From Macrostomum lignano (lineage: Eukaryota): 64,000 bases of DNA. Of this stretch, positions 3,076-54,549 are shown piece by piece. Below the pieces are notes generated by a model. That model was not told the origin of the DNA. It saw only the letters and a program-made list of their open reading frames with translations, and did not search any database. The DNA lies in NCBI GenBank assembly GCA_002269645.1, contig NIVC01002421.1, positions 1 through 64,000 on the forward strand, in the 5' to 3' direction. Position 1 is the first letter of the stretch. Every line of letters begins with the position of its first letter. Made by a program: the position numbers and the translations under genes.

Positions 3076-3390
3076 ATGGCCGCCTACACACCAGAAAAGG
3101 CTTACACCCGGCGACCTGGCCAGGCTTTTGTGGACGGAGACCTCCACCTTCGGAAGTGCGTCAAGAAAGACGCACAAACACAGGTCGCCGAGTACGATAT
3201 CGATGGCGGCCACTCCATGGCTAAACAAACGGCCGCCGACTATAACGACTGGGGGGTGATCCTGGCCCCAAGAAAGACTCCATGAGACGGGGGCCCGTAT
3301 GAGGCCGCCGTCACCATTAGGCCACGGCCCTCACCGCAGGGCTACCGCCTATATCTATGGAAGATAGGCGACCGCCCGGTCAAGGACTAA
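3076..3390 (+). pseudogene. DAQTQ-family cargo protein, copy with one nonsense codon (TGG>TGA at 3283-3285)
   Basis: Reading through the stop gives DGGPYEAAVTIRPRPSPQGYRLYLW, matching the intact copy 17364-17693 (WEGGPYKAPVTIRPWPTPQGYRQYLW). Confidence 0.75.
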
Positions 3391-3670: not shown

Positions 3671-4684
3671 AAGTTTTACCTTAAGTTAGTAGATAGATAG
3701 AAATTTATGAAAAGTCCAGGCGCAGCAAAGGGCGAGGCAGAAGAGCACAATGGTACCCATAGATAGCTATTAGAAGGGCAAACAGAAGCAGCAATAAGGC
3801 AATAAATCAAGACAAATAAGAAGGACCGATTCTAATTAAGCCCCTCCCATTCCAGTGAGCAGCAACACCCCGCCGCAGGAACAACGGCACTCAAACCGGC
3901 CGGAGAAGTAAATTAAGTAGCAGCCCGACTTAGGGAACAACGCAGCACGCGGCACGCAGCAGATTTCTGGCGCACCCAGAGGGAGGAAAATGTGCGGCCC
4001 ACCCACGGACTCCAATCCAACCTGAAGAGGCCGAAGAAGGCGAGATCAACCCGAAGTAGTTGACAACCGAGGGAGAGAGAGAGGGCTGTTTAATCATCCA
4101 TGGACAGAGTTAAGAGACGGAAAATTAAGCTCGTTTTATATAACCTTTCTATCCTAGATTTTATCCAACTCAACACATAGATTTGCGAAACCCCGAATAA
4201 TCTCCAACCTTCACACTTAGCAACCTACTAGAACTAACTAAATCCATGTACAACTAGGGGACTGAGTCCCAGATTGTTATTGCTTAAAACTCCCCGCCGT
4301 TGCTAACCTCGCGAGACACATCACCGGCGGCGGGGGGGGCCAAAAATGCTAATTGGTATAAATAGACGCCCATCTCAAACTGGACCGGCGCTTCGTTTTT
4401 CTTGCGCATTTTCGATCTCGAATTGCTCCCTTTGAATTAGTCTCTGGATTATCCAGTTGGCACAAATCTAAGTCTTTAATACAGTTATTTGTCTTAATTG
4501 TCGCGCAGAGCAAATCCTAGAAAGAGTCAAACTCAGCTTAGATACTAGGAGATCCCGTCAGTTTATACGGTTTTCTCCGACGGCCTGATTGAAGAAGTTA
4601 GAGCTATACAAACCTTAGACCGCAAGACATCTATCTTACGAAAGTGAGAACAAAAACTCAAAGGCCCCAGAGACAGCGCGTATA

Positions 4685-4995
4685 CCCTTTGCAGATTTTT
4701 AACTGCTTATATTTGATGAAATAGGAACTGGCACCACGCCTTAGTCACCGCCTAGAGGAACCAAATTCTTGTTAGCACAAGGATTTCAAAAAAGGGGCAA
4801 TCATATGAGTTAGAAATCTGAACTTTTGCCCTAAGTTAGAAGATAGCTATAAATTTATGAAATGCCCAGGCGCATTGAAGGGCGAGGCAGAAAAGAACAA
4901 TGGAACCCCTAGATAGCTATTAGAAGGGCAGACAGAAGCAGCTTTAAGATAAGTGATCAACTGTCAAGTCACTTTAAATATCCGAATCTAATAAA
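4685..4995 (+). mobile_element. Fragment of a further Y unit (stem-loop D 4692-4820 plus downstream block), fused to Gypsy RT by a deletion
   Basis: Homology to 3531-3800 and 9612-9756; breaks at CCGAATCTAATAAA into RT sequence. Confidence 0.65.
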
Positions 4996-7083
4996 AAGAA
5001 GTGGCGAAACACGAGCTACACATCAAGCCCAACATAGAGATAAAGCTTTACAAAAGATATCCCATCCCATACCAATTAATGGGAGAACTACAGAAAACCA
5101 TCGATAGGATGGAAGCCCAAGGGATAATAAAGAAAGCGGCAACTCCATACATCTCGCCAATCTTACTGGTAAAAAAGAAAGCAGAATCGCCCAATGCTAA
5201 CCCTGTTTACCGTCTCTGCGTCGACTTTAGGGACCTCATTATATTCTAGTGCCTGAAAGACAGTCCATGCCCAGAATCCCCGACCTGCTAGCTAAGCTCA
5301 AAGGCTCCATGTACTTCACCACGTTGGATATGGCCCAAGCATTCTTCCAAGTAGCCCTAGAGGAGGAAAGCCAGAAATACTGCGGCATCTAAACCCCGGA
5401 TGGACAAACCTATGTGTTCACTAGAGCACCCATGGGGTTACAATCTTCGCCTGCGGCGCTATCAAGGGCAGTCAGCATAATCTTACAGGGCATACATTGA
5501 GTCTCCACCTACGTGGACGACCTATTAGTGTTTAATGAGACCTTTGAAGACCACCTCAACACGATAAAAACACGCTATCAGCACTCACTAAGCACGGAAT
5601 GAAACTCAGTTGCTGAAATGCAAATTTGCCAAACCGACACAATCAAGCATCCAATACCATGCCTCCAGGCACTGAAGGACGCACAGAAGGAGGATCCATT
5701 CTGCCAGTACATCAGAGCTATGTGGAACGAGCAACCTGGCGGAGAAGATTTGGACTCAAAATAGAAGCGCCATATTGAACGGCACCTAACAGATCATGCT
5801 GAAATTCTGGGCATTATCCACAGAACGGCAGAAAAAACGCAGCAGATAGTACTGCCATTTAAATATCGCGACACAATTTGCTACTCACTGCACGCCCTAC
5901 CCTTGGCCGCACATCTAGATGTCAAGAAGACCTTGGAGAGGATCCGGCGACATTACTTCTGGATCTCCATGGTCCGAGATATACAAGCATTCTGCGACAA
6001 CTGTATGGACTGTGCCAAAAGCAAGTCCGGCAGGATGCATCAAGGCCTCATTCAGATGTCGGAGATACCACTAAAACCGATGGACAAACTGTCAGTGGAT
6101 CTGGTCGGCCCTATGACACCGGCGAGGATAAGGAACGAGTCGGTAACACATTTTTAACCGTTTCGTGCTGCTTCTCCAAGTTTGCCTTAGCGTTCCCAAT
6201 ACCGGACTTGAAAGCCGAAACCACGGCCGAAACACTCTTCCAAGTGTTCTGTACCTTCGGGATACCCGTAGAACTCTCAACGGATAACATCACCAATTTC
6301 ACGGCGACACTACTCACAGATGCCCTAAATATTCTAGGGATACAGCACATTCTAACGTCACCTTACAACCCTCGAGCAAACCATGTGGAACGCCTTCACT
6401 CCACTCTCCACAATATGCTACGACATTACACGGCGGAGAACCCTCACAATTGGCACCAATACCTACAAGCTATAATCCACGCTTAAAACACAGCCAAACA
6501 AGCGTCCTCTAAATACTCACCATTCGAGATAGTGTTCGCCCGGAAGCCACTAATGCCCACAGAATTAACAACACAACTGCAATTCGTACGATACGCAGAC
6601 GAACCCGCATACGCGGAACGAATGCAAGAGGCTATAACCCTAGCCAGAGAAATAGCCCGTCACCACCTACAAGAAGCTCAAAAGAAAAACACAACAAGGG
6701 CAAACAACAGAAGAGTTCCGACCACGATAACAGTAGGAAGCAGGATAATGCTCCAAAATCCAATGAGACAAGCAAAACATCAATCTAAATTTTCTGGACC
6801 ATACGAGGTGGTTAAATGTAACAGTGCCACTTCGGTGCTGATAAAAAAGACAGATGAACCACCGCAAACAGCCTTCCAGGTACATGTGGACAGGCTGAAA
6901 CCGGTGGCCTCACCAGAAGCGCAAGTCTTCCTCCCCGACCTCCGGCCGTGTGATCCCAACCGCCTGCAAAGACAGCAGAAACAGAAGTTCTCGATGGATG
7001 TCGGCATCCAAGTAGAAGATGGAGCGCCGGCGGACACGGCCAGGAAGAAATACAACCTAAGGAGCAAGACCCACCTTCCGTGA
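4996..7083 (+). pseudogene. Decayed Ty3/Gypsy pol: RT (RNase H deleted) plus integrase
   Basis: SPILLVKKK..YRLCVDFRDL, TLDMAQAFFQV, YVDD (~5510), HHCC zinc finger, DLVGP / STDN / VERLH DDE core, GPY motif, VHVDRLKP, C-terminal YNLR; several stops and frameshifts. Confidence 0.93.
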
Positions 7084-7259: not shown

Positions 7260-7398
7260 ATGTACGACGCTCAGCTTGACTATTTGGACGATGTCTATAT
7301 CGGCGAGGAGACTTCCCCGAATGGAGACGATCGTCAGACCGCTGTTTCAAGACCCGGAGATTCAAGATGAATGGTCGTCAAAGCAGTGTCATCAGTAG
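7260..7398 (+). pseudogene. Internally deleted remnant of the X cargo ORF P (HNH-like)
   Basis: MYDAQLDYLDDVYIGEETSP start and SSKQCH end match the two ends of 13553-14561. Confidence 0.7.
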
Positions 7399-7768
7399 GT
7401 AAGAAAACACCCATAAAACCCAACCAAATAATCCAAATTTAACAATTAAGCGGACAAATTCACGCTTCACCTGACAATTTATTTTTGATTATTCGTACAC
7501 AGTAGTAGTATAACGTAGTAGTGCTATCAAAGATGGACAGAAACACCAGAAAGTAGCACGCATATGGCTTGTAGTATAAAGTAACATTAGTTCGCACGCA
7601 TGATTCTGCGCATAATAAATCATAGCTTAGACCTGTAGCATACGGCAGTTTTAAAAAAGAAAAGTTAAATAGAACAAATACTAAAAATGCTTATATATTT
7701 CCACAAAAAAAATGTTTTCGTCAATCCTTTCGCATAATAGTTACTTAATTCACTGGCAGGTTCCCATA

Positions 7769-8008
7769 TTAAGCAGATAGGGGCCGATAGCGGTACCGGC
7801 AGCAAAACGCCACAATTAAAACGCAGACAACGAGCAGGAGAAATCCGCCTCCGCCTACTCCGCCCAGCACACCTCGGAGCGCTCGGAGCCCAGAATCCGT
7901 CGCTAGAGCTTGATGGGATAGCTCCCTCACGCGCTCCTCCACGGCCAATAAGCGCCGATCCATCCTTGAGAGTAAGCTAGACAATTGCTCCACAGCATGC
8001 TGCGACAT
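7769..8008 (-). CDS. 79-aa coiled-coil + C-terminal transmembrane microprotein (X cargo)
   Basis: ATG at 8008; heptad-like N-terminus, hydrophobic FLLLVVCVLIVAF, then CC-RYRYR; intact paralog at 14952-15191 with mostly synonymous changes. Confidence 0.8.
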   Translation of the reverse strand: MSQHAVEQLSSLLSRMDRRLLAVEERVRELSHQALATDSGLRALRGVLGGVGGGGFLLLVVCVLIVAFCCRYRYRPLSA

Positions 8009-8296
8009 AGTGCCAACGTCAATCCCGTAAAAGCGTAGACAGTATAAGCAGTCAAATTCTATATCCAACACTCGCCAGCGCCGGGGACTCCCTCTCAATT
8101 AAAACTTATATCAGTCCCAGTGGAGGGAACCCCCCTAATAAAAAATCGATCAGTCCGCGGACCCCAAAACCCCCCAGTAGGGGCAAGAGCGGTAAACAAC
8201 CTCAGCGAAGGCCCGTAAAACCCAACCGCGTACATTGTAGCTAAGGATGTACATTGCCAAATAAGAACCAATACAGTTAAAAATCATTCCAGCACA

Positions 8297-8620
8297 ATGG
8301 CTGACCACGGGTGGCGTGCCTATACAGCACTCGATGCTTATCAGAGGCGACCAGGCACCCGTTTTACTGACGTCAACATACATGGGCGGCCCTGTTACAA
8401 GGCAGACGCCCAAACCCAGGCGACTCCGGAAATTATTGATGGGGGACGCTTAGTGGCCGCTGGAACATCGGACCCCGAAGGGGGAGTCATTAGACTCCCC
8501 AGAAGAGAATGGCCTGGGGGCGACTACGTCCCCGCCCCAGACTACGAATGGCCAACGCTCCAGACGCACCGCATGTTCGTCTGGCGCAACCCCAACAAAG
8601 CACCCCCAAATAACAACTGA
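8297..8620 (+). CDS. DAQTQ-family cargo protein (107 aa), unknown function
   Basis: Intact ORF; four paralogs share YxRRPGxxFxDxxxHxxxCxKxDxQTQxxxxxxDGG; synonymous-biased divergence versus 15476-15805. Confidence 0.8.
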   Translation: MADHGWRAYTALDAYQRRPGTRFTDVNIHGRPCYKADAQTQATPEIIDGGRLVAAGTSDPEGGVIRLPRREWPGGDYVPAPDYEWPTLQTHRMFVWRNPNKAPPNNN

Positions 8621-8679
8621 TCGTGCTAACTTAAATTCTAAATAACCTACATTAAATCAAGATATTACGTGACAAATAT

Positions 8680-8797
8680 TAATTTCTAACCCTATATCGT
8701 TCATATTCTTGCGCTATTTCATTTCAGATTCAGGAGATTAATCCTCGTTGCACAAGGATTTCAAAAAAAGGGGGAATAATATAGGGATTAGAAATTA
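8680..8797. other. Stem-loop module D, X-family version
   Basis: TAATTTCTAACCCTATAT / ATATAGGGATTAGAAATTA outer arms; inner AATCCTCGT-TGC-ACAAGGATT. Confidence 0.7.
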
Positions 8798-9300
8798 TGA
8801 AAGTTGGGACAAATAAGAGTTCGCTAAAGGGCAAAGTAAGAAGCAAAAAAAAGCAAGGGGCGAAAGTTCAATTTAAAGATAAGACACCTAAGTGAGAGAA
8901 ATTAAAGAACGGCAAGAAAGTGAAACAAGCTATAGATAAGAAACTAACTCTGACTTTCCCCCAAGATTTCAGACTAAAACCAGATGATATCAAATCGGCC
9001 GAGGTACCAGGCTGAGCCAGTCGGCGCGGTGCCAGGAGAAGCAATACGACACAAAGCCCGACTGGCGGGCGAGATAAAGCAATGGTCAACAGGCCAAGGT
9101 CAGCGGTGACGAACGACCCCAGGGAATAAGAGGACGACTCACCGAGGGACGCACGAGGGGTCTGACGTACGAATCGACTCGAACGATGAACCCTGAACTG
9201 ACCTTTAACCATCGCCTGATGCGACCAATTAACCGATAGCAGATTATCTCTCTCGCCCCGTAGCAACGCGCTAATCTAATGTTGCTGCGTCTGTTTTGGA

Positions 9301-9360
9301 CACCCCGCCGTTGCTAATCAGCGGCGGGGTATGACGTGTATCAAATAATCTATAAAATAG
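9301..9360 (+). promoter_or_regulatory. Putative Pol II core promoter of X: inverted GC boxes, CRE-like TGACGT, TATA
   Basis: ACCCCGCCG-TTGCTAATCAG-CGGCGGGGT-ATGACGTG..TATAAAATAG; repeated at ~16530-16590 and ~16975-17035. Confidence 0.6.
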
Positions 9361-9611
9361 ACACGGCCTTGGCCCCGAAATGGGCAACGGAGAAAAGAGT
9401 CAGAGTTAAGACTGGAAGTCCTGTGCACTTCACAAAACCTTGAGTTTACTTAATCTTCAGCATTTTTGCCGTAGGCGCGAGTAGTAAGCAGCCTCTAGCG
9501 ATCTCTAGTTGTAAGCCCTCTTAGGCTTCAAGGACAGCGAAAGCAATAGAACAAAACCGCTAGACGACCAAGGAGAGAAGCATAACCGAAGCCCGAGAGA
9601 GGAGTCTTACA

Positions 9612-10596
9612 GAAATTTATGAAAAGCCCAGGCGCAGTGAAGGGCGAGGCAGAAGAGTACAATGGAACCCCTAGATAGCTATTAGAAAAGCAAACAGAAG
9701 CAGCTTTACTATAATTAATCAACTGTCAAGTCAATGTGAATAGCCGAATCTAATAAAGCCTCTTTCAATTCCAGTTAGTAGCGTCACCCCGCCGCAGGCA
9801 CAATGGCGACTAAACCGGCCGGGAAAAGCAAACTGAGCAGCGGCCTGACTTAGAGAACAACGCGGCACGCGGCATCTTCTGGCGCACCCTGAGGGAGAAA
9901 ACGTGAGGCCCACCTAGAGACTCCTACCCAACCCGAAGCTGCCCAAGAAGGCGAGATCAACCCCAAGCTGCCTGACAACCGAGAGAAATAGAGGACTGTT
10001 TAATCATTCATGGACAGAGTGTAGAGACGGAAAACTATGCACTTTTTCTATAATCTTTCTATCCCAAATTTTATCCAACTCAACACAGATTTGCGAAAGC
10101 CCGAATAATCTCTAACCTTCACACTTAGCAACCTATTAGAACTAGCTAAATTCATGTACAATTGGGGGACTGAGTCCCAGTTTGTTATTTCTCAAAACCC
10201 CCCGCCGTTGCTAACAACGCGAAGACACCCCACCGGCGGCGGGGGAGGCTAAAAATGCTAATTGGTATAAATAGACGCTCCTCTCAAACTGGAGCGGCGC
10301 TTCGGTTTTCCTGCGCAGTTTTTCGATCTTGAATTGCTCCATTTGAATTAGTTTCTGGATTATCCAGTTGACAGAAATCCGAGTCTCAAATCGATTATTT
10401 GCCTTAACTGTGACATAGAGCAAATCTTAGAGAGACTCCAACTCAGCTTAGATACTAGGAGATCCCGTCAGTTTATACGGTCTCCTCTGACGGCCTGATA
10501 GGAGAGACTAAGAGCTGTAAGAACCTTAGACCGCTAGACATCTATCTTAAGAAAGTGAGAACACGAACTCAAAGGCCCCAGAGAAAGACGCGTATA
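9612..10596 (+). mobile_element. Y-family unit, right part (TATA at 10266), left side interrupted by X1
   Basis: Begins mid-block GAAATTTATGAAAAG (cf. 3702, 4853) and ends CGCGTATA. Confidence 0.65.
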
Positions 10597-10965
10597 CTCG
10601 GGCTTGCTACACTTATTTGCTTGCCTCGATTCTTATTACGCAGCTGTACATCGGATTGAGTTTCTTTGGAGAGGTTAGTAGATGAAAAATGGTCTTTTCT
10701 TTCGTTCTTTGTGAATTTCAATGTGGGTAGAATAGTTCCATATTCTACAGATGGTTCGGTACCTTACCCATTGATTCGTATTCGTAATGAAAAAAACGGC
10801 TCTTGTTCTTGTCTTGCCTTATCTTGTCTTGCTACAGGCACTTGTTCCCCAGTGTCTAGAAGCGGGAATTTGAGAGTGATTGATCACCAGTCTTAATCTC
10901 TTCAGTAGTTGTTATTAACTGTGACCGTATAAATAGTGACCCTGTTATATTTCAACATAACATTT

Positions 10966-11529
10966 GTCTACGAGTTTTTCTATTCAAGGATTCAATTCCA
11001 TCGGTCGCTTGCTTCTGCCCGCGTGCTTGGTGGAGATACGGATAGTTTGATCCTGGCATTGGTTATGGCCAACCCGGAGACGAGTCCTCAGGAGACATTG
11101 TTTAAAGACTTGGTGGAGTGCGGTTTGTTAGATACTAGTAATTATCCACCTTCTCATCCACTTTATACAACAAAGTATAAAGGGAAGTTAATGGCCTGGA
11201 AAGATGAAGTTTGCGGTTGTACGCCGTTGGAGTTTGCATTTCTACGCCCGAAAAACTATTCAATGGTGTATGCAAAGGAAAGCCTCTGTCAGATTGTGCG
11301 TTGCAAGGGCGTGTCGAAGTCAATTGTAAGAGGTATGAAGCACAATGTATTTTTGGGTGCGTTGAAGGATCGAGTTTTGGGGCATGTAACGATGCGGACG
11401 ATTACTTCGCGACGACAGAAGATTTATATTCTTGAGCAGCGCAAGCAGGCGCTTAGCTTTTTCGACACGAAGCGAGCCTGGCTCGATCCCTACTCATCCC
11501 TCCCATTTGGTCATTGGCGGTTGACTTGA
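10966..11529 (+). pseudogene. C-terminal fragment of Maverick/Polinton (adintovirus-like) protein-primed DNA polymerase B
   Basis: YEFFY, GDTDSL (motif C), DTSNYPPSHPLY, KDE, EFAFLRPKNYS, KGV, LSFFDTKR, LPFGH; homology appears to stop upstream of ~10966. Confidence 0.85.
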
Positions 11530-11798
11530 CTTGTTCTCTCTGTCTCTATTTTCTGTCTGTTTATGCTTTTTCTGCTCACAATATATGCGCGCAATTATCG
11601 AATGTATATACAAGAATCTGCCTTTCTTTCTTTCTCTTCGTATTTTTTCGTTTTTCTAGGCCAATGATAGCAGTGCAGGGGATTAGTACTAGGCTTAGTT
11701 TTTTTGATTGGGACGAGGATTACGAGGGTAGTACCAGACTTATTTTAGAGGACGACGATCCTGCTAAGCATAAGATGAACTATGATCCCGCAGCCACG

Positions 11799-12281
11799 AT
11801 GAGCTCCGACGCTTGAACGACGGTCCCGCTGCGCATAGTGCTCACGGATGCCGGGGCAGTAATGCCTCGGCGAGCTACGGCCGGGTCGGTGGGCTATGAC
11901 CTAGCCACGTGCGAAGACCGCACTGTGGAGGCCTTTGACACAGCCATCATTTGCACCGGCCTCCGGGTGATGCTGCCGCTAGGCACCTATAGTCAGATAG
12001 CGAGCCGGTCCAGTTGGGCCAACCCAGGCCTCAATGTGCAGGGTGGCGTGGTTGACCCGGACTATACCGGGGAACTCCGCGTGATCCTGCACAACACGTC
12101 AGATGAGAAAGTTCATCTACTGTGTGCCACCAGCGTGGTTCAACTGATTCTGGAGCGCTGCGTCAGGCCCCCGGTAGAAGTCGGCCGAGCTCGCAAGGGC
12201 CAGCTGCCGGGGGTTTGGCACCGACAACCGGAGCCGGTGGCGGTTCGCGAGACGGGCGGCATGGGCAGCACTAACATCTGA
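11799..12281 (+). pseudogene. dut: Trimeric dUTPase with an in-frame TGA at 11814-11816
   Basis: All five motifs recognisable (VGYDL, SRSS, GVVDPDYTGEL, QLI, RETGGMGSTN); ATG 11799 is in frame with the downstream ORF. Confidence 0.9.
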
Positions 12282-12381
12282 TGCTGCTCGCGCCCGGAGC
12301 CCGTCGGTCGGTGGTGGGAATTGGTGGTGGTTTTTAATACAATATACTGCTCGTGGATTTAACCGCTGTGTGTATAAGCAA

Positions 12382-12725
12382 ATGCAGTTGGTTCTTTTAG
12401 TACAATTAAGTGGGGTGGGAACACAAGGCCAACAGAAGAAGAAGCGAGTGCGTTTACCATCTTTCAGGGGAGCTTCATTTGCCGGGGGTTACCAATTCTG
12501 CGGCCCGGGACACGATTGAGAGAACGTTTGGCGAGGGGCGATACTGGGAAGAATCGGCTCGATAAATTGTGTCTCTTACATGACCTGGCATACGAGAAGC
12601 ACTCGGACGTGGCAGAGCGTAAAAGGCCGATCAACAACTCGAAGCAAGAGCTCGAGAGATTGCTACGGATCCTACAACTAAGTGGGGGGGACGTTTGGCC
12701 GCGAAACTGGTGTCCCGTGTTTTCT
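12382..12725 (+). pseudogene. Parvovirus-type phospholipase A2 domain protein (Maverick/adintovirus PLA2-like), two frameshifts
   Basis: GYQFCGPG / TRLRERLARGDTGKNRLDKLCLLHDLAYEK / ADQQLEARAREIATD across three frames; shifts fall in short homopolymer runs. Confidence 0.8.
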
Positions 12726-13552
12726 AGCATTTTTCTAGCGAGCATGATTAGTGGTGGTGGCGCTGAGAATCTGTTTAAGCGCTGTTATAATCGTTTGCGT
12801 TCTTTCGCGATGAATTATCTGCGTATTAGATTGCGGTAATTTGCTTACTCGTTTTTAATGCGTATGGACTTGCGGCGAATTCAGTCAAATATACTTTGCA
12901 GAGATAAATGGCCAAGGCTAAGGAAGAATTGGACTTTGCATTCAATATTTCTTTTAGGAGAGAGCTAGTGTTGGTTAGTGTGTCGTATAAGATAACTACA
13001 CTATACATACACTATACTTACATCTATAACTACATTTATAACTATTTCATTTCAGACCCAGGAGAATAATCCTCGTTGCACAAGGATTTCAAAAAGGGAA
13101 TAATATAGGGATTAGAAATTAGGACAAGCCTGAACAAAATAAAAGGTTCGCTAAAGGGCAAAGTAAGAAGCTAAAACCAGTGGGCGAAAGTTCAATTTAG
13201 AGATAAGACACTTAAGTGAGAAATTAGAAGAACGGCAAGAAAGCAAAAAAAATCATAGATATGATATGAACTTAATTGTCACTTTCCCCCAAAATTTCAG
13301 ACCAAACGAGATTTCAAAATCGGCCGAGGTACCAGGCAGAGTCAGTCGGCGCAGTGCCAGGAGAATCGAGACGACATGTCACAGAAAGCGGGGGGAGAGT
13401 AGAAAGACTAAAAAACATTCATTTTCATATATATGTACTCAGTTGGTATGCGCTGCACTTTACAATATAAAATATTTACTGTTAAGTACGGCTCGTATCT
13501 ATACATACCCGATTAAAATAACTTAAGCACAGACTCATATCACACACAACAG

Positions 13553-14561
13553 ATGTACGACGCTCAGCTCGACCACTTGGATGATGTCTATATCGGCGAG
13601 GAGACTTCCCCCCGAATGGAGACGATCGTCAGACCGCTGTTTTAAGAACCGGAGATTCAAGATGAATGGTCCAAAAATAGTCGTTTGCAACAAAAATATC
13701 AGCGGTTGCGGCGCGAATGGAAATCAAGAGGGCCACACATCCCCTACGAGATGGGTGACAACACGAAGTGGATGGCTCGATCCGATGACACAACGTACGT
13801 GATACGATTTCACCAAGCTAGTACAACAGACAGTAATCTCCAGCCGGCCAGGTCGGTACAATGATGTAAAATTGTTTGACATCCACCAGGAAATGCTAGA
13901 AATTCCGAGAACGACCAATATGGTGACACATCTGACATGCCAGCGTATCTGCAACAACCCGAGGGACCTCCGATGGTTAAGCGCCGATTAAAACATACTA
14001 GAGCGAAACGCGACTCTCATTTTTGATTACACAAACCAAGATGCCTTCACAGGTCACCATTTCATAGTAATGACAAGGTGGCTCCGCTCACTCATAACGC
14101 ACCCCTGGGGACCTGCAGAAAACCACATGGAACGCCACGTCACTCTGAGAACCTACTTGATAAGCACGCTGCACTATCACGGGATCCATATTTCCCGACA
14201 AGAAATAAGAAAACCGGTAACGCTAGCTTACTCACCGGCCACGTTCCAGTGGCCACAACTGAAAACAGCACTGCTAGCCACCGCACACCCAACCCGGAAA
14301 CAGACGGGTAGTAGAGGCGAAGTTCCCGTAAGGACCGAAAGGGGAGGGTACAGATGGTGAGATTTGACACGATGGTCGAGCGGTTACTCGTGTTCGTGGA
14401 CCAATCGTATTGTCGTACTATCGCACCAAAGTGCTCCCCACAACCCAACACCGGACGAGCTAGCCCTGTGTTTAGGGTTGGTTCAAAAGGTGAAGGGAAA
14501 AATAGGTCTAACGCACAATAGAGAAATTAACAGGTATGATTCGTCAAAGCAGTGTCATTAG
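13553..14561 (+). pseudogene. Decayed ~335-codon cargo ORF P with HNH/His-Me-finger-like motif
   Basis: One frameshift and three stops; HQEMLEIP..VTHLTCQRICNNPRDLRWLSAD*N resembles HxxCxxxxCxNPxHLx7N; the first stop is CAA in the 7260 copy. Confidence 0.5.
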
Positions 14562-14951
14562 TAGGTAAGAAAACACCCATAAAATCCAACAAGAATAATT
14601 TCATACTTAACATTAGCGGACAAACCCATGCTTCAACTAACGATTTATTTATGCTTACAAACGTAGTACGCGTAGCAGCGCCAAAAAAACATCGATTAGA
14701 AATAAAATAAAATGCGTCATACACATAGCCTATAGTAGGTAGCAATACCGTCGTTGAATGATTACGCATGCCCACGCGCTCTTGTGCATAATAATTCTTA
14801 GCTGCAGACCCTTAACATGCTAAAGTATTTTACGGTTACATAAAACAATACAAAACTACCTATATACCGTTATACTAAAACAAAGCAGTTTGTGTCAATC
14901 ATTTTCGCAGAATACAGCAGTCACCTAATAACTTCCCAACGGGTGCCATCG

Positions 14952-15191
14952 TTAAGCCGATAGGGGACGATAGCGATACTTGCAGCAGAACACCGCAATT
15001 AGAACACATAAGATGAGCAGGAGAAATCCACCGCCGCTAACGCCGCCCAGCACGCCTCGCAGCGCCCGTAGCCCAGAGTCAGTAGCCAGAGCCTGATGGG
15101 ATAGCCCTTCCACGCGCTTCTCCAAGACCGATAGTCGCCGTTCCATCTCCGAAAGTAATTTAGACAGTTGTTCAATAGCATGCTGCGACAT
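14952..15191 (-). CDS. 79-aa coiled-coil + TM microprotein, copy 2
   Basis: Intact, same length as 7769-8008. Confidence 0.8.
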   Translation of the reverse strand: MSQHAIEQLSKLLSEMERRLSVLEKRVEGLSHQALATDSGLRALRGVLGGVSGGGFLLLILCVLIAVFCCKYRYRPLSA

Positions 15192-15475
15192 AGTGCCAAG
15201 CCAAAAAAGTTGCAGACAGAATGGAACGAGCTAATCCAAGATAGTTGACTCTCGCCAGCGCCGGGGATACTTTCACAGTAGAACTTATACTAGGCCTAGA
15301 GACGGCCACCTTAATAAAATCGATCGCCCCGCGGACCCCAAACCCCCCCCCCAGTAGGGGTAAGAGCGGTAAATAACCTCAGCGAAGGCCCATAAACCCA
15401 CCCGCGTACATTGAGCTAGCTAAGGATGTACACTGCCAAATAAGAACTAACACAGACAAAAATCATTCCAGCGCA

Positions 15476-15805
15476 ATGGCTGACCGCGAGTGGCGTCCCT
15501 ATACAGCACTCGATGCCTATCAGAGGCGACCGGGCACCCGTTTTAGGGACGTTAATATACATGGGCAGCCCTGCATAAAAGCAGATGAGCAAACGCAAGT
15601 TACACCGGACGACCTCGATGGCGGACGGTCTGTGGCCTCCGGAACCTCGGACCCTGAAGGAGGAGTCATCCGACTCCCCAGAAGGGAATGGCCAGGGGGC
15701 GACTACGTTTCCACCCCTGACAACTCATGGCCAACACTTCAAACTCACCGCCTGTTTGTCTGGCGTAAACCCAACTGGGCGCCCCCGGATGAGGAAAATG
15801 ACTAA
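15476..15805 (+). CDS. DAQTQ-family cargo protein (109 aa)
   Basis: Intact paralog of 8297-8620. Confidence 0.8.
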   Translation: MADREWRPYTALDAYQRRPGTRFRDVNIHGQPCIKADEQTQVTPDDLDGGRSVASGTSDPEGGVIRLPRREWPGGDYVSTPDNSWPTLQTHRLFVWRKPNWAPPDEEND

Positions 15806-15907
15806 ATGCGAGGCTGCAACTGCTAATTAACTAATTGACACAATTCACATCTCACTATCAATTATTACGTTTAATAATTAATTAATCATTTAATTAATGG
15901 CTGCACT

Positions 15908-16023
15908 TAATTTCTAACCATATATCGTTAAAATTCTTACGCCATTTCATTCCAGATTCAGGAGATTAATCCTCGTTGCACAAGGATTTCAAAAAAAGGG
16001 GGAATAATATAGGGATTAGAAAT
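15908..16023. other. Stem-loop module D, X-family version
   Basis: Homologous to 8680-8797. Confidence 0.65.
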
Positions 16024-17363
16024 CAGAATAATCGGGACAAAATAAAGGTTCACTAAAGGACAAAATAAGAAGCTAAAAGCAGGGGGGCGAAAGTTCAATT
16101 TAAAGATAAGACACCTAAGTGAGATAAATTAAAGAACGTCAAGAAAGCGAAATAAATCATAGATATGATAAGAATTTAATTGTAACTTTCCCCCAAGATT
16201 TTAGACCAAACCCGATGACATCAAGTCGGCCGAGGTACCAGGCAGAGCCAGTCGGCGCGGTGCCAGGAGAATCGATACGACATGATACCCCGACTGGCGG
16301 GCGAGATAGAGCAATGGTCAACAGGCCAAGTCAGCGGTGGCGTACGGCCAGGGAGCAAGAGGACGATTCACCGAGGGACGCACGAGGGGTCTGACGTGCG
16401 AATCGACTCGAATAATGAACTCTGAACTGACCTTTAACCATCGCCTGATGTGACAAACTAATAGATATCAAATTATCTCTCTCGCCCCGTAGCAACGCGC
16501 CAATCTAATGTTGCTGCGTCTGTTTTGGCACCCCGCCGTTGCTAATCAGCGGCGGGTATGACGTGTACCTAAAATTCTATAAAATAGACACGGCCTCGGC
16601 CCCGAAATGGGCACTCCGGGAAGATTTAAGCTTCAGAACTGGAAGTCTTGTGCACTTCGCCAATAAATCTAAAAGGACTCATATTTGTTCTTTGTGCTAA
16701 AGGCACGAGTCATAGTCAGCCAAGTAGCGATCTCCTTTGTAAGCTCTCTTAGGCTTCGAGGACAGTGGAAGCAATAGAACAAAACCACTAGACGACCAAG
16801 AAGGAGAGAAGCATAGCCGAAGACCTAAGAGAAGTCTTACACGACATGATACCCCGACTGGCGGGCGAGATAGAGCAATTGTCAACAGGCCAGGGTCAGC
16901 GGTGACAGCTATCAAATTATCTCTCTCGCCTCGTAGCAACGCACTAATCTAATGTTGCTGCATCTGCTTTGGCACCCCGCTGTTGCTAATCAGCGGCGGG
17001 GGATGACGTGTACCTAAAATTCTATAAAAATAGACACGGCCTCGGCCCCGAAATGAGCAACCTGAGAAGAATCCAAGGGACAGCAAGAGTTCCAGTGCAA
17101 TTCACGGAAATCCCAAGATTACTGTTCGTTATTTGTGCTACAGGCACGAGTCTTGGCCAACAAATTGCGATCTCTGTTGTAAGATCTTTTAGGCTCAAGA
17201 TCGAGTGAAAAGCTATATTGATCAAGAACAGGAATTAAAAGGTCAGACTTAGTCAAAAATAGTTAGAGCCTAAGAGAATTCTTACACTACTAAGGGATAT
17301 TTTGGGCAGAGAAAAACACGAGCCAGGTCGCCGAGCTTACGAGCTTAATTTTAGCGCATACAC

Positions 17364-17693
17364 ATGGCCGCTTACACCAGCGATAAAGTCTACGCCCGGC
17401 GACCTGGCCAAGCTTTTGTGGACGTGGATATCCATGTCTACAGGTGCGTCAAAAAAGACGCACAAACGCAGGTCACCGAGTGTGACATAGATGGTGGCCA
17501 TTCAGTGTCCACCCAAACCGCCGAGTCGGACAACGATTGGGGACCCGTGTTGCCTCTCACGAAGATCCCATGGGAGGGAGGCCCCTACAAGGCCCCCGTG
17601 ACCATCCGGCCGTGGCCCACGCCGCAGGGCTACCGCCAATATTTATGGGCCAAAGGTGCCCGCCCAGAGACCGAGGAAGGCGGCGATAATTAA
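17364..17693 (+). CDS. DAQTQ-family cargo protein (109 aa), Y type
   Basis: Intact ORF, paralog of 3076-3390. Confidence 0.8.
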   Translation: MAAYTSDKVYARRPGQAFVDVDIHVYRCVKKDAQTQVTECDIDGGHSVSTQTAESDNDWGPVLPLTKIPWEGGPYKAPVTIRPWPTPQGYRQYLWAKGARPETEEGGDN

Positions 17694-17944: not shown

Positions 17945-20375
17945 AAGTTTATCTTAAGTTAGAAGAAGATAGTTAAGTCCCTTTCCATTCCAGTCAGTAG
18001 GGACAACCCGCCGCAGGAACAATGGCGATTAAACTGGCTGGGAGAAGCGGCCCAGCTTAAAGAACAACGCGGCACGCGGCATCTTCTGGCGCACCCTGAG
18101 GGAGAAAACGTGAGGCCCACCTACAGACTCCTATCCAACCTGAAGTGGCCCAAGAAGGCGAGATCAACCCCAAGCTGCCTGACAACCGAGAGAAACAGAG
18201 GACTGTTTAATCTTCAATGGACGGAGTTAAGAGACGGAAAATTAAGCTCTTTTCCTGTTATTTGTCTATCCCAAATTTTGTCCAATGCAACACATAGATT
18301 TCCAAAAAACCCGAATAATCTCTAACCTTCACACTTAGCAACCTACTAGAACTAACTCGATTCATGTACAACTAGGGGACTGAGTCCCAGATTTTTATTG
18401 CTTAAAACCCCCCGCCGTTGCTAACCACGCACGCGAAGACACCTCACCGGCGGCGGGAGACGCAAAAATGCTAATTGGTATAAAATAGACGCCCATCTCA
18501 AACTGGAGCGGCGCTTCGTTTTTCCTGCGCAGTTTCCGATCTTAAATTGCTCCATTTGAATTGGTCTCTGGACTGTTCCAGTTGGCACAAACCAAAGCCT
18601 TAAATCAATCATTTGTCTTAATTGTTGCGCAGAGCAAATACCAGAGAGAGTTACCCTCAGTCTAGATACTAGGAGATCCCGTCAGTTTATACGGTTCTTC
18701 TCTGACGGCTTGATAGGAGAGATTAAGAGCTGCACGAACCTTAGACCGCTAGACACCTATCTTAGAAAGTGAGAACATCAACTCAAAGGCCCCAGAGAAA
18801 AACGCGTATAAAGATTTTTCGGTCCCGAGCGGCGCTACCTCGGATCTTGGAAAAGACCTGTCTTCGAACAGCTGAACTTGTGTTTCACAGTTTCTTTGTG
18901 TTATCAGACGAACACGCGCGCCAACCGCTATCTCCGTTGTAATTTGCGAGTTAAGCTAGAACCGATAAGGAGGGTCTTAAAATGGGGGCAATTATAGAGG
19001 GCTCGGAAATTCACTAGCATAGGAAGTTCTTTCGAGACGCGTTTAAGCTGGACGAAGCAAAGAATTATCAGTATAGGCAGAGGAAAGACAAATAAGACAG
19101 ATAAGATGGTAGAAGGCCGAATGCGGGCAAACAACAGTGACCCATAGCAGCATATGACAAATTCACAGCAGCCCCCAAACCCAAATCTGGCAATCAATCC
19201 CGAAGGGCGTGGGAACCGAAGAGTGGACGCGCGATCCGATGTATGCGGAAATGCAGTGGAAAGACTCAAAAACTGACCTCCACCTCCCCCGCTCGATCGC
19301 TCGAACTCAACCAACGTAACCCGCAAGTTTAGCGTCAAAACCGTAAAAAGTGGTTTGTTTCGGCCCTAAGGCGCTTAACTTGTTTTACTCAGAGCTTGGC
19401 CTCGTAAAAATAACCGTTTTACTATTAAACACTATTCTGTGATTTATACGGTCATCGTATGTAGCAATAACAACTGCCTTTAGTTTAAGGCTAGTAATTT
19501 TTATACTTGGTTAATTCAAAATATATTACTCTACCAGAACAAAACGAATGGTCCTAATGCAAAGTTATTATCCATAAATCTATGAAATTAAAGACATTAA
19601 AATCAATCCACACAAATTGAAATGATGTTTTTTAATTGATAGCGCTAGTTGCTGTCAATGCCGAAGCATCAACGATAACCAGCTGTGCGTTTAAACTCAC
19701 CAAACAGAGCCGTAGAATTTAAAGAATTCCAGCCCGTCTAGCTCGTAAAAGCCATGGCGAGGGAGAGACGACAAGACTGTCGAGCAGCGCGTGTGCTGAT
19801 ATATTATAGAAAGGCCGCTTGTGCATGCACAGGGGTTGCTGGACACCCGGGCATGTGTGGGCAATCCAGATTGGCCGAGAGGGAGAGGGAGACAAGGGGA
19901 GAGAGAGAAGAGAGAGACTCAGTTTTCTGTACAGGCCCAAGGCTTCCGTTCTGGGTTTCAAGACCTTGTCAAGGCCGAAGAGCCTCGTTTCCGCGGCCCC
20001 TCTTCCGAGTGGGGGGGGGCTTGGGGTTGGTGTTGCGTCTGTTGGCTGATGGCTGAGTTCGTAAATGTGCACATGACTCCACCCTACGTTTTTCAATTCG
20101 TCTATTAGGGCAGAAAAGCTAGGACGGGTAAAAGATAGGACGTGCTTGAAATTGGTCTTCTGCTTTTCGTGGCGGACCCTGATAAGTGAAAATTCATACT
20201 TTTTTCGTGTGCTCAAGGTTCTAAGGAATTAGATTCGGCTTCGGGATAAGTCTGCTTCGAGCTAGAATGTTCATTTATCTGTCCAACCAAAACCAAACAA
20301 CATTTTTACTCCTGTATCTGTATCGGATGGCAATAGGATTACAGATGCTCTGCTCTGCCTTCGACTTCGATCATG

Positions 20376-43817: not shown

Positions 43818-43895
43818 CAATCCCCTCTCTGCGAAGCCCGAGAAGAATCAAGAATAGAAAAATGAAATAAAAATCAGAAACCGGCCAGCAGTGAA

Positions 43896-54547: not shown

Positions 54548-54549
54548 AC

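What the first reader, a model, noticed from the sequence alone, without database searches (positions are those of the whole stretch)
7769..15191. 79-aa antisense coiled-coil/TM microprotein with CC and polybasic tail, reminiscent of a minimal fusogen or decoy
Seen: two intact copies of identical length. The 21 codons SHQALATDSGLRALRGVLGGV differ by 11 synonymous and 0 replacement changes (hand count). Layout: heptad helix, Gly-rich linker, TM, then CC(R/K)YRYR. It is transcribed divergently from the DAQTQ gene across ~290 bp. Known: reovirus p10 FAST fusogens are small with a TM, palmitoylated di-Cys and basic tail; SNAREs are coiled-coil + C-terminal TM. Inference: a cell-cell spread factor or membrane-traffic/entry interference protein in an env-less element.
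Basis: partly seen in the sequence, partly recalled or inferred. Interest (0 to 1): 0.7.

Follow-up and report, generated by a model that had tools for sequence, protein, structure and literature searches.

The report
Retrotransposon antisense coiled-coil membrane microprotein
A 79-codon gene on the reverse strand of a flatworm-type LTR retrotransposon is real and under selection, and it encodes a one-helix membrane protein that resembles, without matching, the tiny fusion-like proteins some envelope-less insect retrotransposons use to pass between cells.

Summary
Two intact 79-codon ATG ORFs lie on the minus strand (7769-8008 and 14952-15191), inside a 2.2-kb repeated module. Each sits 288 or 284 bp from a divergent 107-109-codon gene. 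The 21-codon block shows 11 synonymous and 0 replacement changes, as claimed. Over the whole ORF dN/dS is 0.20 (Fisher p=1e-6), and every plus-strand frame is closed by stops.

A search of 1.84 billion representative proteins gave one hit: an 85-aa Macrostomum lignano protein (E=6e-7). It aligns without gaps and occupies the same antisense position downstream of a homologous Ty3/mdg4-type RNase H-integrase and a shared extra ORF. The ORF is therefore a conserved accessory gene of a flatworm LTR-retrotransposon lineage.

The product is predicted as one helix: six heptads, an invariant GxxxGxxxG, a hydrophobic span, an invariant Cys-Cys and a polybasic end. No Pfam, PDB or Foldseek relative was found. 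It fails several defining features of reovirus p10 FAST proteins, SNAREs and insect sORF2.

Its closest functional analogue is the sORF2/FAST-like protein of envelope-less insect mdg1 elements. That role is my leading inference, at about 0.3, because topology is unresolved. A cytosol-facing tail-anchored protein is nearly as likely. I rate it a new variant of a known kind.

The parts
7769..8008 (-). Microprotein gene, copy A (79 codons plus stop)
   Evidence: Intact ATG ORF. dN/dS against copy B is 0.20. The plus-strand frames are closed by stops.
14952..15191 (-). Microprotein gene, copy B (79 codons plus stop)
   Evidence: Intact ATG ORF, 80% identical to copy A. 36% identical to the M. lignano homologue P0001 in a gapless alignment.
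7865..7993 (-). Copy A, residues 6-48: six-heptad amphipathic coiled-coil segment
   Evidence: 12 of 13 a/d positions are hydrophobic; 2 of 20000 shuffles reach this. AlphaFold2 predicts a single helix over residues 3-73.
15048..15176 (-). Copy B, residues 6-48: six-heptad amphipathic coiled-coil segment
   Evidence: 12 of 13 a/d positions are hydrophobic; 0 of 20000 shuffles reach this.
7847..7873 (-). Copy A, residues 46-54: GxxxGxxxG glycine zipper
   Evidence: G46, G50 and G54 are invariant in all three homologues. It lies inside the block with dN/dS 0.02.
15030..15056 (-). Copy B, residues 46-54: GxxxGxxxG glycine zipper
7799..7843 (-). Copy A, residues 56-70: hydrophobic membrane span ending in Cys-Cys
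   Evidence: Mean Kyte-Doolittle hydropathy 3.4; summed Hessa free energy -5.0 kcal/mol.
14982..15026 (-). Copy B, residues 56-70: hydrophobic membrane span ending in Cys-Cys
   Evidence: Mean Kyte-Doolittle hydropathy 3.4; summed Hessa free energy -5.5 kcal/mol.
7784..7804 (-). Copy A, residues 69-75: CCRYRYR (invariant di-Cys plus polybasic stretch)
   Evidence: C69, C70 and R73 are invariant in all three homologues; tail net charge is +3.
14967..14987 (-). Copy B, residues 69-75: CCKYRYR
8009..8296 (.). 288-bp spacer between the divergent microprotein and DAQTQ genes, copy A (candidate bidirectional internal promoter)
   Evidence: 79% identical to copy B overall, and 92% in the 96 bp next to the DAQTQ ATG, which is higher than in the coding sequences. 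A promoter role is inferred, not shown.
15192..15475 (.). 284-bp spacer, copy B
8105..8110 (-). TATAAG, 102 nt upstream of the copy A ATG
   Evidence: Conserved in copy B at -98. A sequence motif only.
15284..15289 (-). TATAAG, 98 nt upstream of the copy B ATG
7478..7483 (-). AATAAA, 285 nt after the copy A stop
   Evidence: At the same offset within the repeat module as in copy B. The M. lignano gene has AATAAA 141 nt after its stop.
14644..14649 (-). AATAAA, 302 nt after the copy B stop
8297..8620 (+). DAQTQ gene, copy A (107 codons), divergent partner
   Evidence: dN/dS against copy B is 0.16, with differences by codon position of 13/11/39. No Pfam family. AlphaFold2 mean pLDDT 31.
15476..15805 (+). 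DAQTQ gene, copy B (109 codons)
17364..17693 (+). DAQTQ paralogue C (109 codons, intact; 41-44% identical to A and B)
3076..3390 (+). DAQTQ paralogue D, broken by one in-frame stop (67% identical to C)
5639..7083 (+). End of RNase H plus integrase of element A (H2C2 zinc finger, rve core, C-terminal module). Broken by one frameshift and one in-frame stop. gag, protease and reverse transcriptase are absent upstream (5' truncation).
   Evidence: Pfam PF17921 at 3e-17 and PF00665 at 2e-9. 62-77% amino-acid identity to the M. lignano locus.
13806..14360 (+). ORFx of element B, a sense-strand ORF between pol and the microprotein. Broken by one in-frame stop and lacks about 90 N-terminal codons relative to the M. 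lignano ORFx. Copy A lacks ORFx altogether (one deletion).
   Evidence: 46% identical to L001 ORFx, E=1e-38. No Pfam or PDB relative.
7375..9611 (.). Repeat module A (microprotein gene, spacer, DAQTQ gene, 3' non-coding part)
   Evidence: 77% identical to 14541-16841 over 2.3 kb.
14541..16841 (.). Repeat module B
9611..10597 (.). LTR-like repeat of about 1 kb closing element A. Its 3' part is 96.7% identical to 1-454.
   Evidence: LTR status is inferred; no canonical TG..CA ends or primer-binding site were seen.
1..454 (.). Tail of an LTR-like repeat, cut by the window start
3699..4685 (.). LTR-like repeat (84% identical to 9611-10597), directly downstream of DAQTQ-D
17970..18810 (.). LTR-like repeat closing element B, downstream of DAQTQ-C

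Best explanation
Shown: the 79-codon ORF is a protein-coding accessory gene of a Ty3/mdg4-type LTR-retrotransposon lineage found in macrostomid flatworms.

It lies between pol (followed by a further sense ORF, ORFx) and the 3' LTR-like repeat, on the strand opposite to pol. Its 3' end therefore converges on pol/ORFx, and its 5' end faces a divergent 107-109-codon gene across about 285 bp.

The product is predicted as one continuous helix. Six heptads (residues 6-48) run through an invariant GxxxGxxxG (46-54) into a very hydrophobic span (56-70). The span ends in an invariant Cys-Cys followed by 3-4 Arg/Lys.

Inferred: the gene is transcribed from an internal promoter in the spacer. Candidate signals are a conserved TATAAG about 100 nt upstream and an AATAAA about 290 nt downstream. 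The protein forms parallel homo-oligomers held in a membrane by its C-terminal end.

Inferred, about 0.3: the short Cys-Cys/polybasic/Tyr tail faces the cytosol and is S-acylated, and the helical N-domain faces outward. The protein would then serve the element as its membrane factor for envelope-independent passage between cells. This is the role proposed for sORF2/FAST-like proteins of envelope-less insect mdg1-group elements. Here the element would use the transmembrane-glycine, di-Cys and basic triad known from reovirus p10 instead of N-myristoylation.
For: Gene reality:
- dN/dS is 0.20 overall and 0.02 for residues 31-55. Third-position excess gives p=5e-4 and Fisher gives p=1e-6. The opposite strand is closed by stops.
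- The only hit among 1.84 billion representative proteins is an 85-aa M. lignano protein (E=6e-7). It aligns without gaps over 79 columns, with 23 invariant positions including G46, G50, G54, C69, C70 and R73.

Element membership:
- In M. lignano locus L001 the homologue sits antisense, 448 bp from the stop of ORFx. ORFx follows an RNase H-integrase that is 62-77% identical to the window's.

Expression hint:
- The M. lignano gene model comes from a transcriptome-derived annotation (PMC5730564).
- TATAAG and AATAAA sit at conserved offsets in both window copies.

Structure:
- AlphaFold2 gives a single helix over residues 3-73 with pLDDT 70. Heptad and hydropathy statistics agree.

Functional analogy:
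- Envelope-less insect Ty3/mdg4 elements carry a roughly 70-aa transmembrane protein with a juxtamembrane polybasic patch and a Tyr just after the span, next to a second small ORF of about 110 aa. That protein localises with capsids at cell-cell contacts (PMC11952523; PMC13486581). Its authors state that palmitoylated variants were outside their search.
- In reovirus p10, the transmembrane glycines, the palmitoylated di-Cys and the membrane-proximal basic residues are all essential for syncytium formation (title of a paper in the reference list of PMC7830690).
- The K+R count is higher on the C-side of the span (3-4 against 2), and copies A and B have Tyr two residues after Cys-Cys.
- The pol-to-LTR interval holds no envelope-sized ORF.
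Against: - Only 9-15 residues follow the span. By established knowledge of tail-anchored proteins the span is still inside the ribosome at termination, which favours post-translational insertion with the N-terminus in the cytosol.
- The would-be ectodomain is 45-55 residues, against about 30 in sORF2 and 20-40 in FAST proteins. It has no N-myristoylation motif (the second residue is Ser), no hydrophobic patch and no cystine loop.
- There is no endodomain amphipathic helix, which FAST proteins need for pore formation.
- All 105 insect sORF2-like genes are in forward orientation; this one is antisense.
- The Tyr after the span is absent in the M. lignano homologue.
- The PF07204 match is below threshold and not reproduced in copy A or P0001.
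- The authors of the sORF2 study could not reproduce fusion in heterologous assays.
- Only three sequences are known, and all three host elements are 5'-truncated and degraded. Neither 'env-less' nor presence in autonomous copies is shown.
Confidence: 0.32

Rival explanations
1. Tail-anchored protein facing the cytosol. The protein inserts post-translationally with its N-terminal coiled coil in the cytosol and its 9-15-residue basic tail in the lumen or intermembrane space. It would then act inside the cell. It could dock or concentrate the element's capsids or RNA on an organelle membrane, or bind a host coiled-coil or SNARE-like partner. The Cys-Cys could form interchain disulfides rather than be acylated.
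For: - The span ends 9 residues (window copies) or 15 residues (M. lignano) from the C-terminus. This is the defining geometry of tail-anchored proteins by established knowledge.
- There is no signal peptide.
- A coiled coil running straight into the span is the SNARE and golgin layout.
- The charge bias across the span is weak: 2 against 3-4 K+R.
Against: - An invariant Cys-Cys with polybasic residues on the luminal side would be unusual, because juxtamembrane acylation and the positive-inside rule point to a cytosolic tail.
- By established knowledge a strongly basic tail disfavours ER insertion, while the very hydrophobic span (mean Kyte-Doolittle 3.4) disfavours mitochondria.
- There is no SNARE or other tail-anchored-family Pfam hit, and no polar zero-layer in the a/d positions.
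Confidence: 0.3
2. Viroporin-like oligomeric channel. The coiled coil drives assembly of a bundle whose glycine-zipper and hydrophobic helices form a pore that alters ion balance or membrane permeability for the element's benefit.
For: - Small size, a single span and an invariant GxxxGxxxG directly before the hydrophobic core.
- An oligomerising heptad domain and a basic stretch beside the span.
Against: - The span has no polar or charged pore-lining residues.
- No retrotransposon is known to need a channel.
- There is no sequence or fold relative among viral proteins.
Confidence: 0.08
3. Captured host fragment or host-directed factor. The ORF would be a transduced piece of a host coiled-coil membrane protein that persists as a passenger. 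Alternatively it acts on the host, for example as a decoy or interference with trafficking or defence, rather than in the element's own transfer.
For: - Accessory ORFs of LTR elements sometimes arise by transduction (PMC11963269).
- The architecture is generic for cellular membrane proteins.
Against: - Transduced ORFs are typically confined to one or a few copies. This one is kept in the same antisense position in lineages that have diverged to 35% amino-acid identity, and it is under purifying selection.
- No cellular homologue appeared among 1.84 billion representatives apart from the element-borne M. lignano copy.
Confidence: 0.1
4. Not a gene. The ORF is open by chance, and the conservation reflects a cis-acting nucleic-acid element such as a promoter or an RNA structure.
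For: - Short ORFs are common here: 44 ORFs of at least 50 codons in 9 kb.
- Neighbouring non-coding stretches are as conserved or more so, reaching 92%.
Against: - Synonymous sites diverge freely (pS 0.44-0.53) while replacements are rare, so the constraint is on the protein.
- Length, start and stop are identical in the two copies.
- There is a gapless remote homologue in another genome.
Confidence: 0.03

Closest known systems
sORF2 / FAST-like small transmembrane proteins of insect mdg1-group Ty3/mdg4 retrotransposons (412, Mdg1, Stalker, Blood, Tabor; Voichek et al. 2025, PMC11952523; PMC13486581)
   Same: - An accessory microprotein (63-107 aa there, 79-85 aa here) of a Ty3/mdg4-type element with no envelope-sized ORF in the interval seen.
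- A single hydrophobic span and an amphipathic helical N-domain.
- A polybasic patch right after the span, with a Tyr near the end of the span in the window copies.
- Under purifying selection.
- Accompanied by a second small ORF of about 110 codons.
   Different: - Antisense with its own presumed promoter; all 105 insect cases are forward.
- Located downstream of pol rather than upstream of gag.
- No N-myristoylation motif; it has an invariant Cys-Cys instead.
- The N-domain is 45-55 residues with a strict heptad repeat, against about 30.
- The tail is only 9-15 residues, with no amphipathic motif.
- Flatworm host. Per PMC12801592, M. lignano elements fall in the Mag, CsRN1, Gmr1/Osvaldo and Mdg3 clades, not mdg1.
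Orthoreovirus p10 FAST protein (Pfam PF07204)
   Same: - Under 100 aa, with a single span containing glycines.
- A di-Cys directly after the span, followed by membrane-proximal basic residues. This is the triad reported as essential for p10 (reference).
- A sub-threshold Pfam match covers exactly this stretch in copy B.
   Different: - The match scores 13.6 bits against a cut-off of 21.4, and is absent in copy A and the M. lignano homologue.
- No cystine-loop fusion peptide in the N-domain.
- No endodomain beyond the basic stretch.
- Encoded by a retroelement of an invertebrate, not a dsRNA virus.
- No Foldseek match in BFVD.
Antisense additional ORFs between pol and the 3' LTR of plant Ty3/gypsy elements (Grande, RIRE2, Retand/TRP28; PMC11963269)
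   Same: The same genomic position and orientation (antisense, between pol and the 3' LTR). Conserved across family members. Function unknown.
   Different: The plant ORFs are long (over 200 codons) and nuclear or DNA-binding (TRP28), with no membrane span. This one is a 79-codon membrane protein in an animal element.
Tail-anchored coiled-coil proteins such as SNAREs
   Same: A heptad helix running without a break into a C-terminal span, with a very short segment after the span.
   Different: - No SNARE-family Pfam hit.
- 13 hydrophobic layers rather than 16, and no central Gln/Arg layer.
- The basic residues and Cys-Cys lie on the C-terminal side of the span, not the N-terminal side.
Antisense proteins of retroelements (HTLV-1 HBZ, HIV-1 ASP, LINE-1 ORF0; from general knowledge)
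   Same: Encoded on the strand opposite to gag-pol and expressed from an internal or 3' promoter. ASP is hydrophobic and membrane-associated, and ORF0 is a microprotein of similar size.
   Different: No sequence relation was detected. HBZ is a nuclear bZIP protein. ASP is longer, with a different layout. ORF0 has no membrane span and lies in a 5' UTR.

Membership tests
sORF2/FAST-like proteins of LTR retrotransposons (criteria of PMC11952523) | Short ORF (63-107 aa) with one predicted transmembrane domain, inside a Ty3/mdg4 element | tested here: met
   79-85 aa. Span at residues 56-70 with mean Kyte-Doolittle 3.4. Adjacent RNase H and integrase domains.
sORF2/FAST-like proteins of LTR retrotransposons (criteria of PMC11952523) | N-terminal myristoylation motif MGxxxS/T (a search criterion; present in 4 of 6 Drosophila sORF2) | tested here: not met
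   All three homologues start with Met-Ser.
sORF2/FAST-like proteins of LTR retrotransposons (criteria of PMC11952523) | Juxtamembrane polybasic region C-terminal of the span | tested here: met
   (R/K)YRYR in the window copies and RRRR in M. lignano; tail net charge +3.
sORF2/FAST-like proteins of LTR retrotransposons (criteria of PMC11952523) | Ectodomain of about 30 residues with an amphipathic motif | tested here: inconclusive
   The N-domain is amphipathic (hydrophobic moment up to 0.56) but 45-55 residues long.
sORF2/FAST-like proteins of LTR retrotransposons (criteria of PMC11952523) | Amphipathic motif in the cytoplasmic tail after the polybasic patch | tested here: not met
   Only 9-15 residues follow the span.
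sORF2/FAST-like proteins of LTR retrotransposons (criteria of PMC11952523) | Forward orientation relative to gag-pol | tested here: not met
   Antisense to the integrase in all three loci.
sORF2/FAST-like proteins of LTR retrotransposons (criteria of PMC11952523) | N-out/C-in topology, plasma-membrane localisation with capsids | not testable with these tools
   The charge bias is weak (2 against 3-4 K+R) and the tail-anchor geometry points the other way.
sORF2/FAST-like proteins of LTR retrotransposons (criteria of PMC11952523) | Match to the published sORF2 HMM profiles | not tested
Orthoreovirus p10 FAST (PF07204) | Pfam profile match above the gathering score | tested here: not met
   Copy B scores 13.6 bits against 21.4, over residues 52-74 only. 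Copy A and P0001 give no hit.
Orthoreovirus p10 FAST (PF07204) | Ectodomain cystine-loop hydrophobic fusion peptide | tested here: not met
   No Cys before residue 62, and no hydrophobic patch in residues 1-45.
Orthoreovirus p10 FAST (PF07204) | Transmembrane glycines, juxtamembrane di-Cys and basic residues | tested here: met
   G46/49/50/54/55, C69, C70 and R73 are invariant. Acylation itself is not testable here.
SNARE proteins | SNARE-motif profile match, 16 layers with a central Gln/Arg zero-layer | tested here: not met
   No SNARE-family hit at E<=0.1. The a/d residues are VLLMLVVLATLLL, giving 13 layers and no Gln/Arg.
Tail-anchored membrane proteins (topological class) | Single span within about 30 residues of the C-terminus and no signal peptide | tested here: met
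   The span ends 9 or 15 residues from the C-terminus, and the N-terminus is hydrophilic.
Tail-anchored membrane proteins (topological class) | N-terminus cytosolic, post-translational insertion | not testable with these tools
   No topology predictor or experimental data were available.
Antisense additional ORFs of LTR retrotransposons (positional class) | Conserved ORF antisense to gag-pol, between pol and the 3' LTR, present in divergent family members | tested here: met
   Three loci in two genomes. LTR status of the 1-kb repeat is inferred.

The most novel reading that the evidence does not exclude
A flatworm Ty3/mdg4 lineage has independently evolved an antisense-encoded micro-fusogen with its own promoter. 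It would be of the acylated type, with a di-Cys as in reovirus p10 rather than N-myristoylation. It would let capsids pass directly between cells, for example from soma or stem cells into the germ line. [quoted passage not shown]
Probability: 0.2. Interest if true: 0.85.

Novelty: new variant of a known kind. Interest (0 to 1): 0.55.

Why it matters
Small FAST-like membrane proteins were recently proposed as the way envelope-less insect retrotransposons move from soma to germ line. The known cases are all forward-oriented, found in insect retrotransposons and a few vertebrate virus groups, and were mostly found through a myristoylation filter.

A conserved, selected, antisense membrane microprotein in a flatworm element would widen the search space in three ways: other phyla, the other strand, and acyl-Cys variants. 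It also offers a candidate in Macrostomum, a model with stem cells, regeneration and public stranded and end-mapped RNA-seq data.

Even if it proves to be a cytosol-facing tail-anchored protein, it would be, as far as my searches show, the first membrane-anchored antisense accessory protein described in an animal LTR retrotransposon. It is also a protein family with no annotated relatives.

Tried and rejected
Searches that found nothing:
- The word-indexed protein search found nothing for the microprotein or for the DAQTQ protein.
- My third and last search of that kind used the M. lignano RNase H-integrase ORF with too strict a cut-off (1e-20). It returned nothing, so I could not fetch further family loci.
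- Exact look-ups of ten window ORFs found none in the collection, so the window's genome is not held there.
- The PDB sequence search and Foldseek against BFVD and PDB gave nothing. A single long helix is uninformative for fold search in any case.
- Pfam gave only sub-threshold coiled-coil or membrane-span matches: DUF7310, Cast, Matrilin, Orthoreo_P10 and DAP10.
- HMMs built from the three microproteins and the four DAQTQ copies found no further copies in the window. They also found no DAQTQ gene in the M. lignano locus.
- AlphaFold2 on DAQTQ failed (pLDDT 31), so the idea that DAQTQ matches the helix-turn-helix sORF1 rests on size alone.

Readings considered and rejected:
- A last exon of a larger spliced gene. 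The sequence upstream of the ATG is not conserved between copies.
- A coding frame on the plus strand. All frames there carry stops.
- A remnant of an envelope transmembrane subunit. The strand is wrong and the ORF has its own ATG.

Left unresolved: the exact ends of the LTR-like repeat. I saw no TG..CA termini or primer-binding site.

Deliberately not done: I did not copy published sORF2 sequences into a script for comparison, because they derive from element consensus sequences.

Full report
**1. The observation**

The minus strand carries two 79-codon ATG ORFs, at 7769-8008 (copy A) and 14952-15191 (copy B). They are 80% identical at both the nucleotide and protein level. 25 codons differ synonymously and 16 non-synonymously.

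Nei-Gojobori dN/dS is 0.20 (dS 0.66), and 0.02 for residues 31-55. Differences fall 12/9/28 on codon positions 1/2/3 (binomial p=5e-4). Synonymous versus non-synonymous change gives Fisher p=1e-6. The antiparallel frame that shares the wobble position shows the same ratio. It and the other plus-strand frames are interrupted by 1-7 stops in both copies, so the coding strand is the minus strand. Because synonymous sites diverge freely, the constraint is on the protein and not on a nucleic-acid element.

The divergent 'DAQTQ' gene (8297-8620 and 15476-15805) begins 288 and 284 bp from the microprotein ATG. It is itself under purifying selection, with dN/dS 0.16.

**2. Context in the window**

The first 19 kb is a cluster of rearranged retroelement copies. 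The rest of the window holds host genes: three KY-like genes, an AMP-binding enzyme, an ankyrin protein and an MFS transporter. It also holds many satellite arrays.

Both microprotein genes lie in a 2.2-kb module, 7375-9611 and 14541-16841, that is 77% identical between copies.

- Upstream of module A on the plus strand is the end of an RNase H domain and an integrase (5639-7083), with H2C2 zinc-finger and rve core domains. It is broken by one frameshift and one in-frame stop. No gag, protease or reverse transcriptase lies ahead of it.
- Upstream of module B is a further sense ORF, ORFx (13806-14360). It is broken by one in-frame stop and is N-terminally incomplete. Copy A lacks ORFx altogether (one deletion).
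- Each module is followed by an LTR-like repeat of about 1 kb (9611-10597 and 17970-18810; other copies at 3699-4685 and 1-454). The pair 1-454 and 10142-10596 is 96.7% identical.

I could not see canonical LTR termini or a primer-binding site, so 'LTR' is an inference. No ORF longer than 142 codons lies between pol/ORFx and these repeats, so there is no envelope-sized gene in that interval.

**3. Relatives elsewhere**

Word-indexed searches, exact look-ups, IMG/VR and metagenome scans found nothing.

The exhaustive HMMER search of 1.84 billion representative proteins gave a single hit, P0001 (E=6e-7). It is an 85-aa 'hypothetical protein BOX15_Mlig017149g9' of the flatworm Macrostomum lignano.

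P0001 aligns with both window proteins without a gap over 79 columns, at 33-36% identity. The 23 invariant positions include M1, S2, L9, L12, L13, S39-G40-L41, R45-G46, G49-G50, G54-G55, C69-C70, R73 and P76-L77.

In its genomic locus (L001) the gene lies antisense to, and converges on, an RNase H-integrase that is 62-77% identical to the window's. It also converges on a 253-codon ORFx that is 46% identical to the window's ORFx. That integrase is degraded too, with two frame changes, one of them carrying an internal deletion of about 110 codons. L001 has no DAQTQ gene.

The order pol, ORFx, antisense microprotein is therefore conserved between lineages that have diverged to about 35% protein identity. 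That argues against a recent transduced passenger. It makes the ORF an accessory gene of the element lineage.

The M. lignano annotation is transcriptome-derived (PMC5730564). The existence of that gene model is indirect evidence that the strand is transcribed.

The window probably comes from a macrostomid or related flatworm. This is inference only, from 68-74% nucleotide identity in the integrase and a satellite-rich genome.

**4. The protein**

AlphaFold2, run on the three-sequence alignment, predicts one helix over residues 3-73 with mean pLDDT 70.

- Residues 6-48 follow a strict 3-4 heptad pattern. The a/d residues are I/V-L-L-M-L-L/V-V-L-A-T-L-L-L, with 12 of 13 hydrophobic. At most 2 of 20000 shuffles reach this in the window copies. 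The M. lignano protein has 10 of 13, which 5.5% of shuffles reach.
- An invariant G46xxxG50xxxG54 glycine zipper leads into a very hydrophobic core at residues 56-70, with mean Kyte-Doolittle hydropathy 3.4.
- The core ends in an invariant Cys-Cys followed by (R/K)YRYRPLSA, or RRRRSPLAESTVVTI in M. lignano.

This points to a parallel homo-oligomer anchored by its C-terminal end.

Topology is ambiguous. K+R counts (2 on the N-side against 3-4 on the C-side), the di-Cys with basic and Tyr context, and a YxxΦ-like YRPL in copies A and B all suggest a cytosolic tail. Against that, only 9-15 residues follow the span. That is tail-anchor geometry, which by established knowledge gives a cytosolic N-terminus.

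**5. Expression signals (sequence only)**

A TATAAG lies 102 and 98 nt upstream of the ATG in the two copies. An AATAAA lies 285 and 302 nt after the stop, at the same module offset in both. M. lignano has an AATAAA 141 nt after its stop.

The part of the spacer next to the DAQTQ ATG is 92% identical between copies, which is higher than the coding sequences. An internal bidirectional promoter is a reasonable inference, but it is not shown.

**6. Comparison with known families**

No Pfam, PDB or Foldseek relative exists.

The reovirus p10 profile (PF07204) matches copy B only, at 13.6 bits against a cut-off of 21.4, over the span, Cys-Cys and basic stretch alone. The p10 ectodomain fusion loop and its endodomain are absent. 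Membership is therefore rejected, although the local triad of transmembrane glycines, di-Cys and basic residues is the one reported as essential in p10.

SNARE membership is rejected as well. There is no profile hit, there are 13 layers, and there is no polar zero-layer.

The closest functional analogue turned up in the literature search. Envelope-less mdg1-group Ty3/mdg4 elements of Drosophila and many other insects encode sORF2. It is a 63-107-aa FAST-like transmembrane protein with an amphipathic ectodomain, a juxtamembrane polybasic patch and a Tyr after the span. It sits next to a second small ORF of about 110 aa. It localises with capsids at somatic protrusions that enter the oocyte.

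The window's pair (79 aa with a membrane span, 107-109 aa without) echoes this. It differs in these respects:

- orientation (antisense; all 105 insect cases are forward)
- position (after pol)
- absence of an N-myristoylation motif
- a longer heptad N-domain
- a minimal tail without an amphipathic motif
- the host phylum

The authors of that study note that palmitoylated variants were outside their search, and that fusion could not be reproduced heterologously.

Antisense ORFs between pol and the 3' LTR are known in plant Ty3/gypsy elements. Those are long nuclear proteins.

**7. Verdict**

The gene is real; I put this at about 0.9. It is a new protein family and a new variant of the known class of retrotransposon accessory ORFs.

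Its mechanism is inferred. The leading reading, at about 0.3, is an sORF2/FAST-like membrane factor with a cytosolic acylated tail. A cytosol-facing tail-anchored coiled-coil protein is nearly as likely, also at about 0.3. A viroporin-like pore (0.08), a host-directed or captured fragment (0.1) and a non-gene (0.03) follow.

The evidence base is thin: three sequences, all in degraded elements. The decisive functional test cannot be proposed here.

Noticed in passing
window 10933-12836 (+): A fragment of a different element lies between the LTR-like repeat and element B. It holds an ORF with a DTDS-type motif that looks like a DNA polymerase B to the eye but has no Pfam or PDB support. It also holds a clear dUTPase (11817-12278, PF00692, E=5e-22) and an ORF (12378-12836) with a sub-threshold parvovirus-type phospholipase A2-like match (PF08398, E=0.021). 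It may be a remnant of a DNA-virus-like or Polinton-like insertion.
   Followed up: partly
window 697-1326 and 1426-2265 (+): Two paralogous ORFs with Sina-type RING fingers (PF21362, E=2.5e-4 and 2.3e-9) lie directly after the LTR-like repeat tail, where gag would be expected. They may be further accessory or captured genes of the same element group.
   Followed up: partly
window 3076-3390, 8297-8620, 15476-15805, 17364-17693 (+): The DAQTQ gene occurs four times in two types. A and B are 80% identical to each other, C and D 67%, and identity between the types is about 41-44%. Each complete LTR-like repeat has a DAQTQ gene upstream of it. Element B carries both types in tandem. There is no Pfam family and AlphaFold2 gives no confident fold (pLDDT 31). 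It is absent from the M. lignano locus.
   Followed up: partly
window 9001-9300 (also 16907-17195, 16463-16755, 13042-13376): A non-coding stretch of the module is 92% identical between copies A and B, against 80% for the coding sequences. Parts of the module's 3' region are also re-duplicated nearby. No ORF is shared by both copies here. It may be a cis-acting element or the result of recent gene conversion.
   Followed up: no
window 26104-27441, 31033-32760, 34811-36040 (-): Three tandem long ORFs with KY-like immunoglobulin-like domains (PF23265, E down to 2e-40). One also has a weak transglutaminase-core match. This looks like a local host gene family expansion.
   Followed up: no
window 20370-21294, 22162-22813, 29332-29769, 43159-43820, 52625-54548, 58109-60251, 61904-62511: Many satellite arrays with periods from 9 to 43 bp, up to 67 copies. 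Examples are 48 copies of a 40-bp unit at 97% identity and 67 copies of a 32-bp unit. Several long 'ORFs' in these regions are repeat artefacts.
   Followed up: no
window 48001-50000: A 2-kb island of 27% G+C sits between blocks of 48-64% G+C.
   Followed up: no
L001 10706-11467 (-) and window 13806-14360 (+): ORFx is a 253-codon sense ORF between integrase and the microprotein gene. Its C-terminal part is conserved at 46-50% identity and includes the shared peptides HPWGP and QWPQLKTAL. It has no Pfam or PDB relative and is another uncharacterised accessory gene of this lineage.
   Followed up: partly
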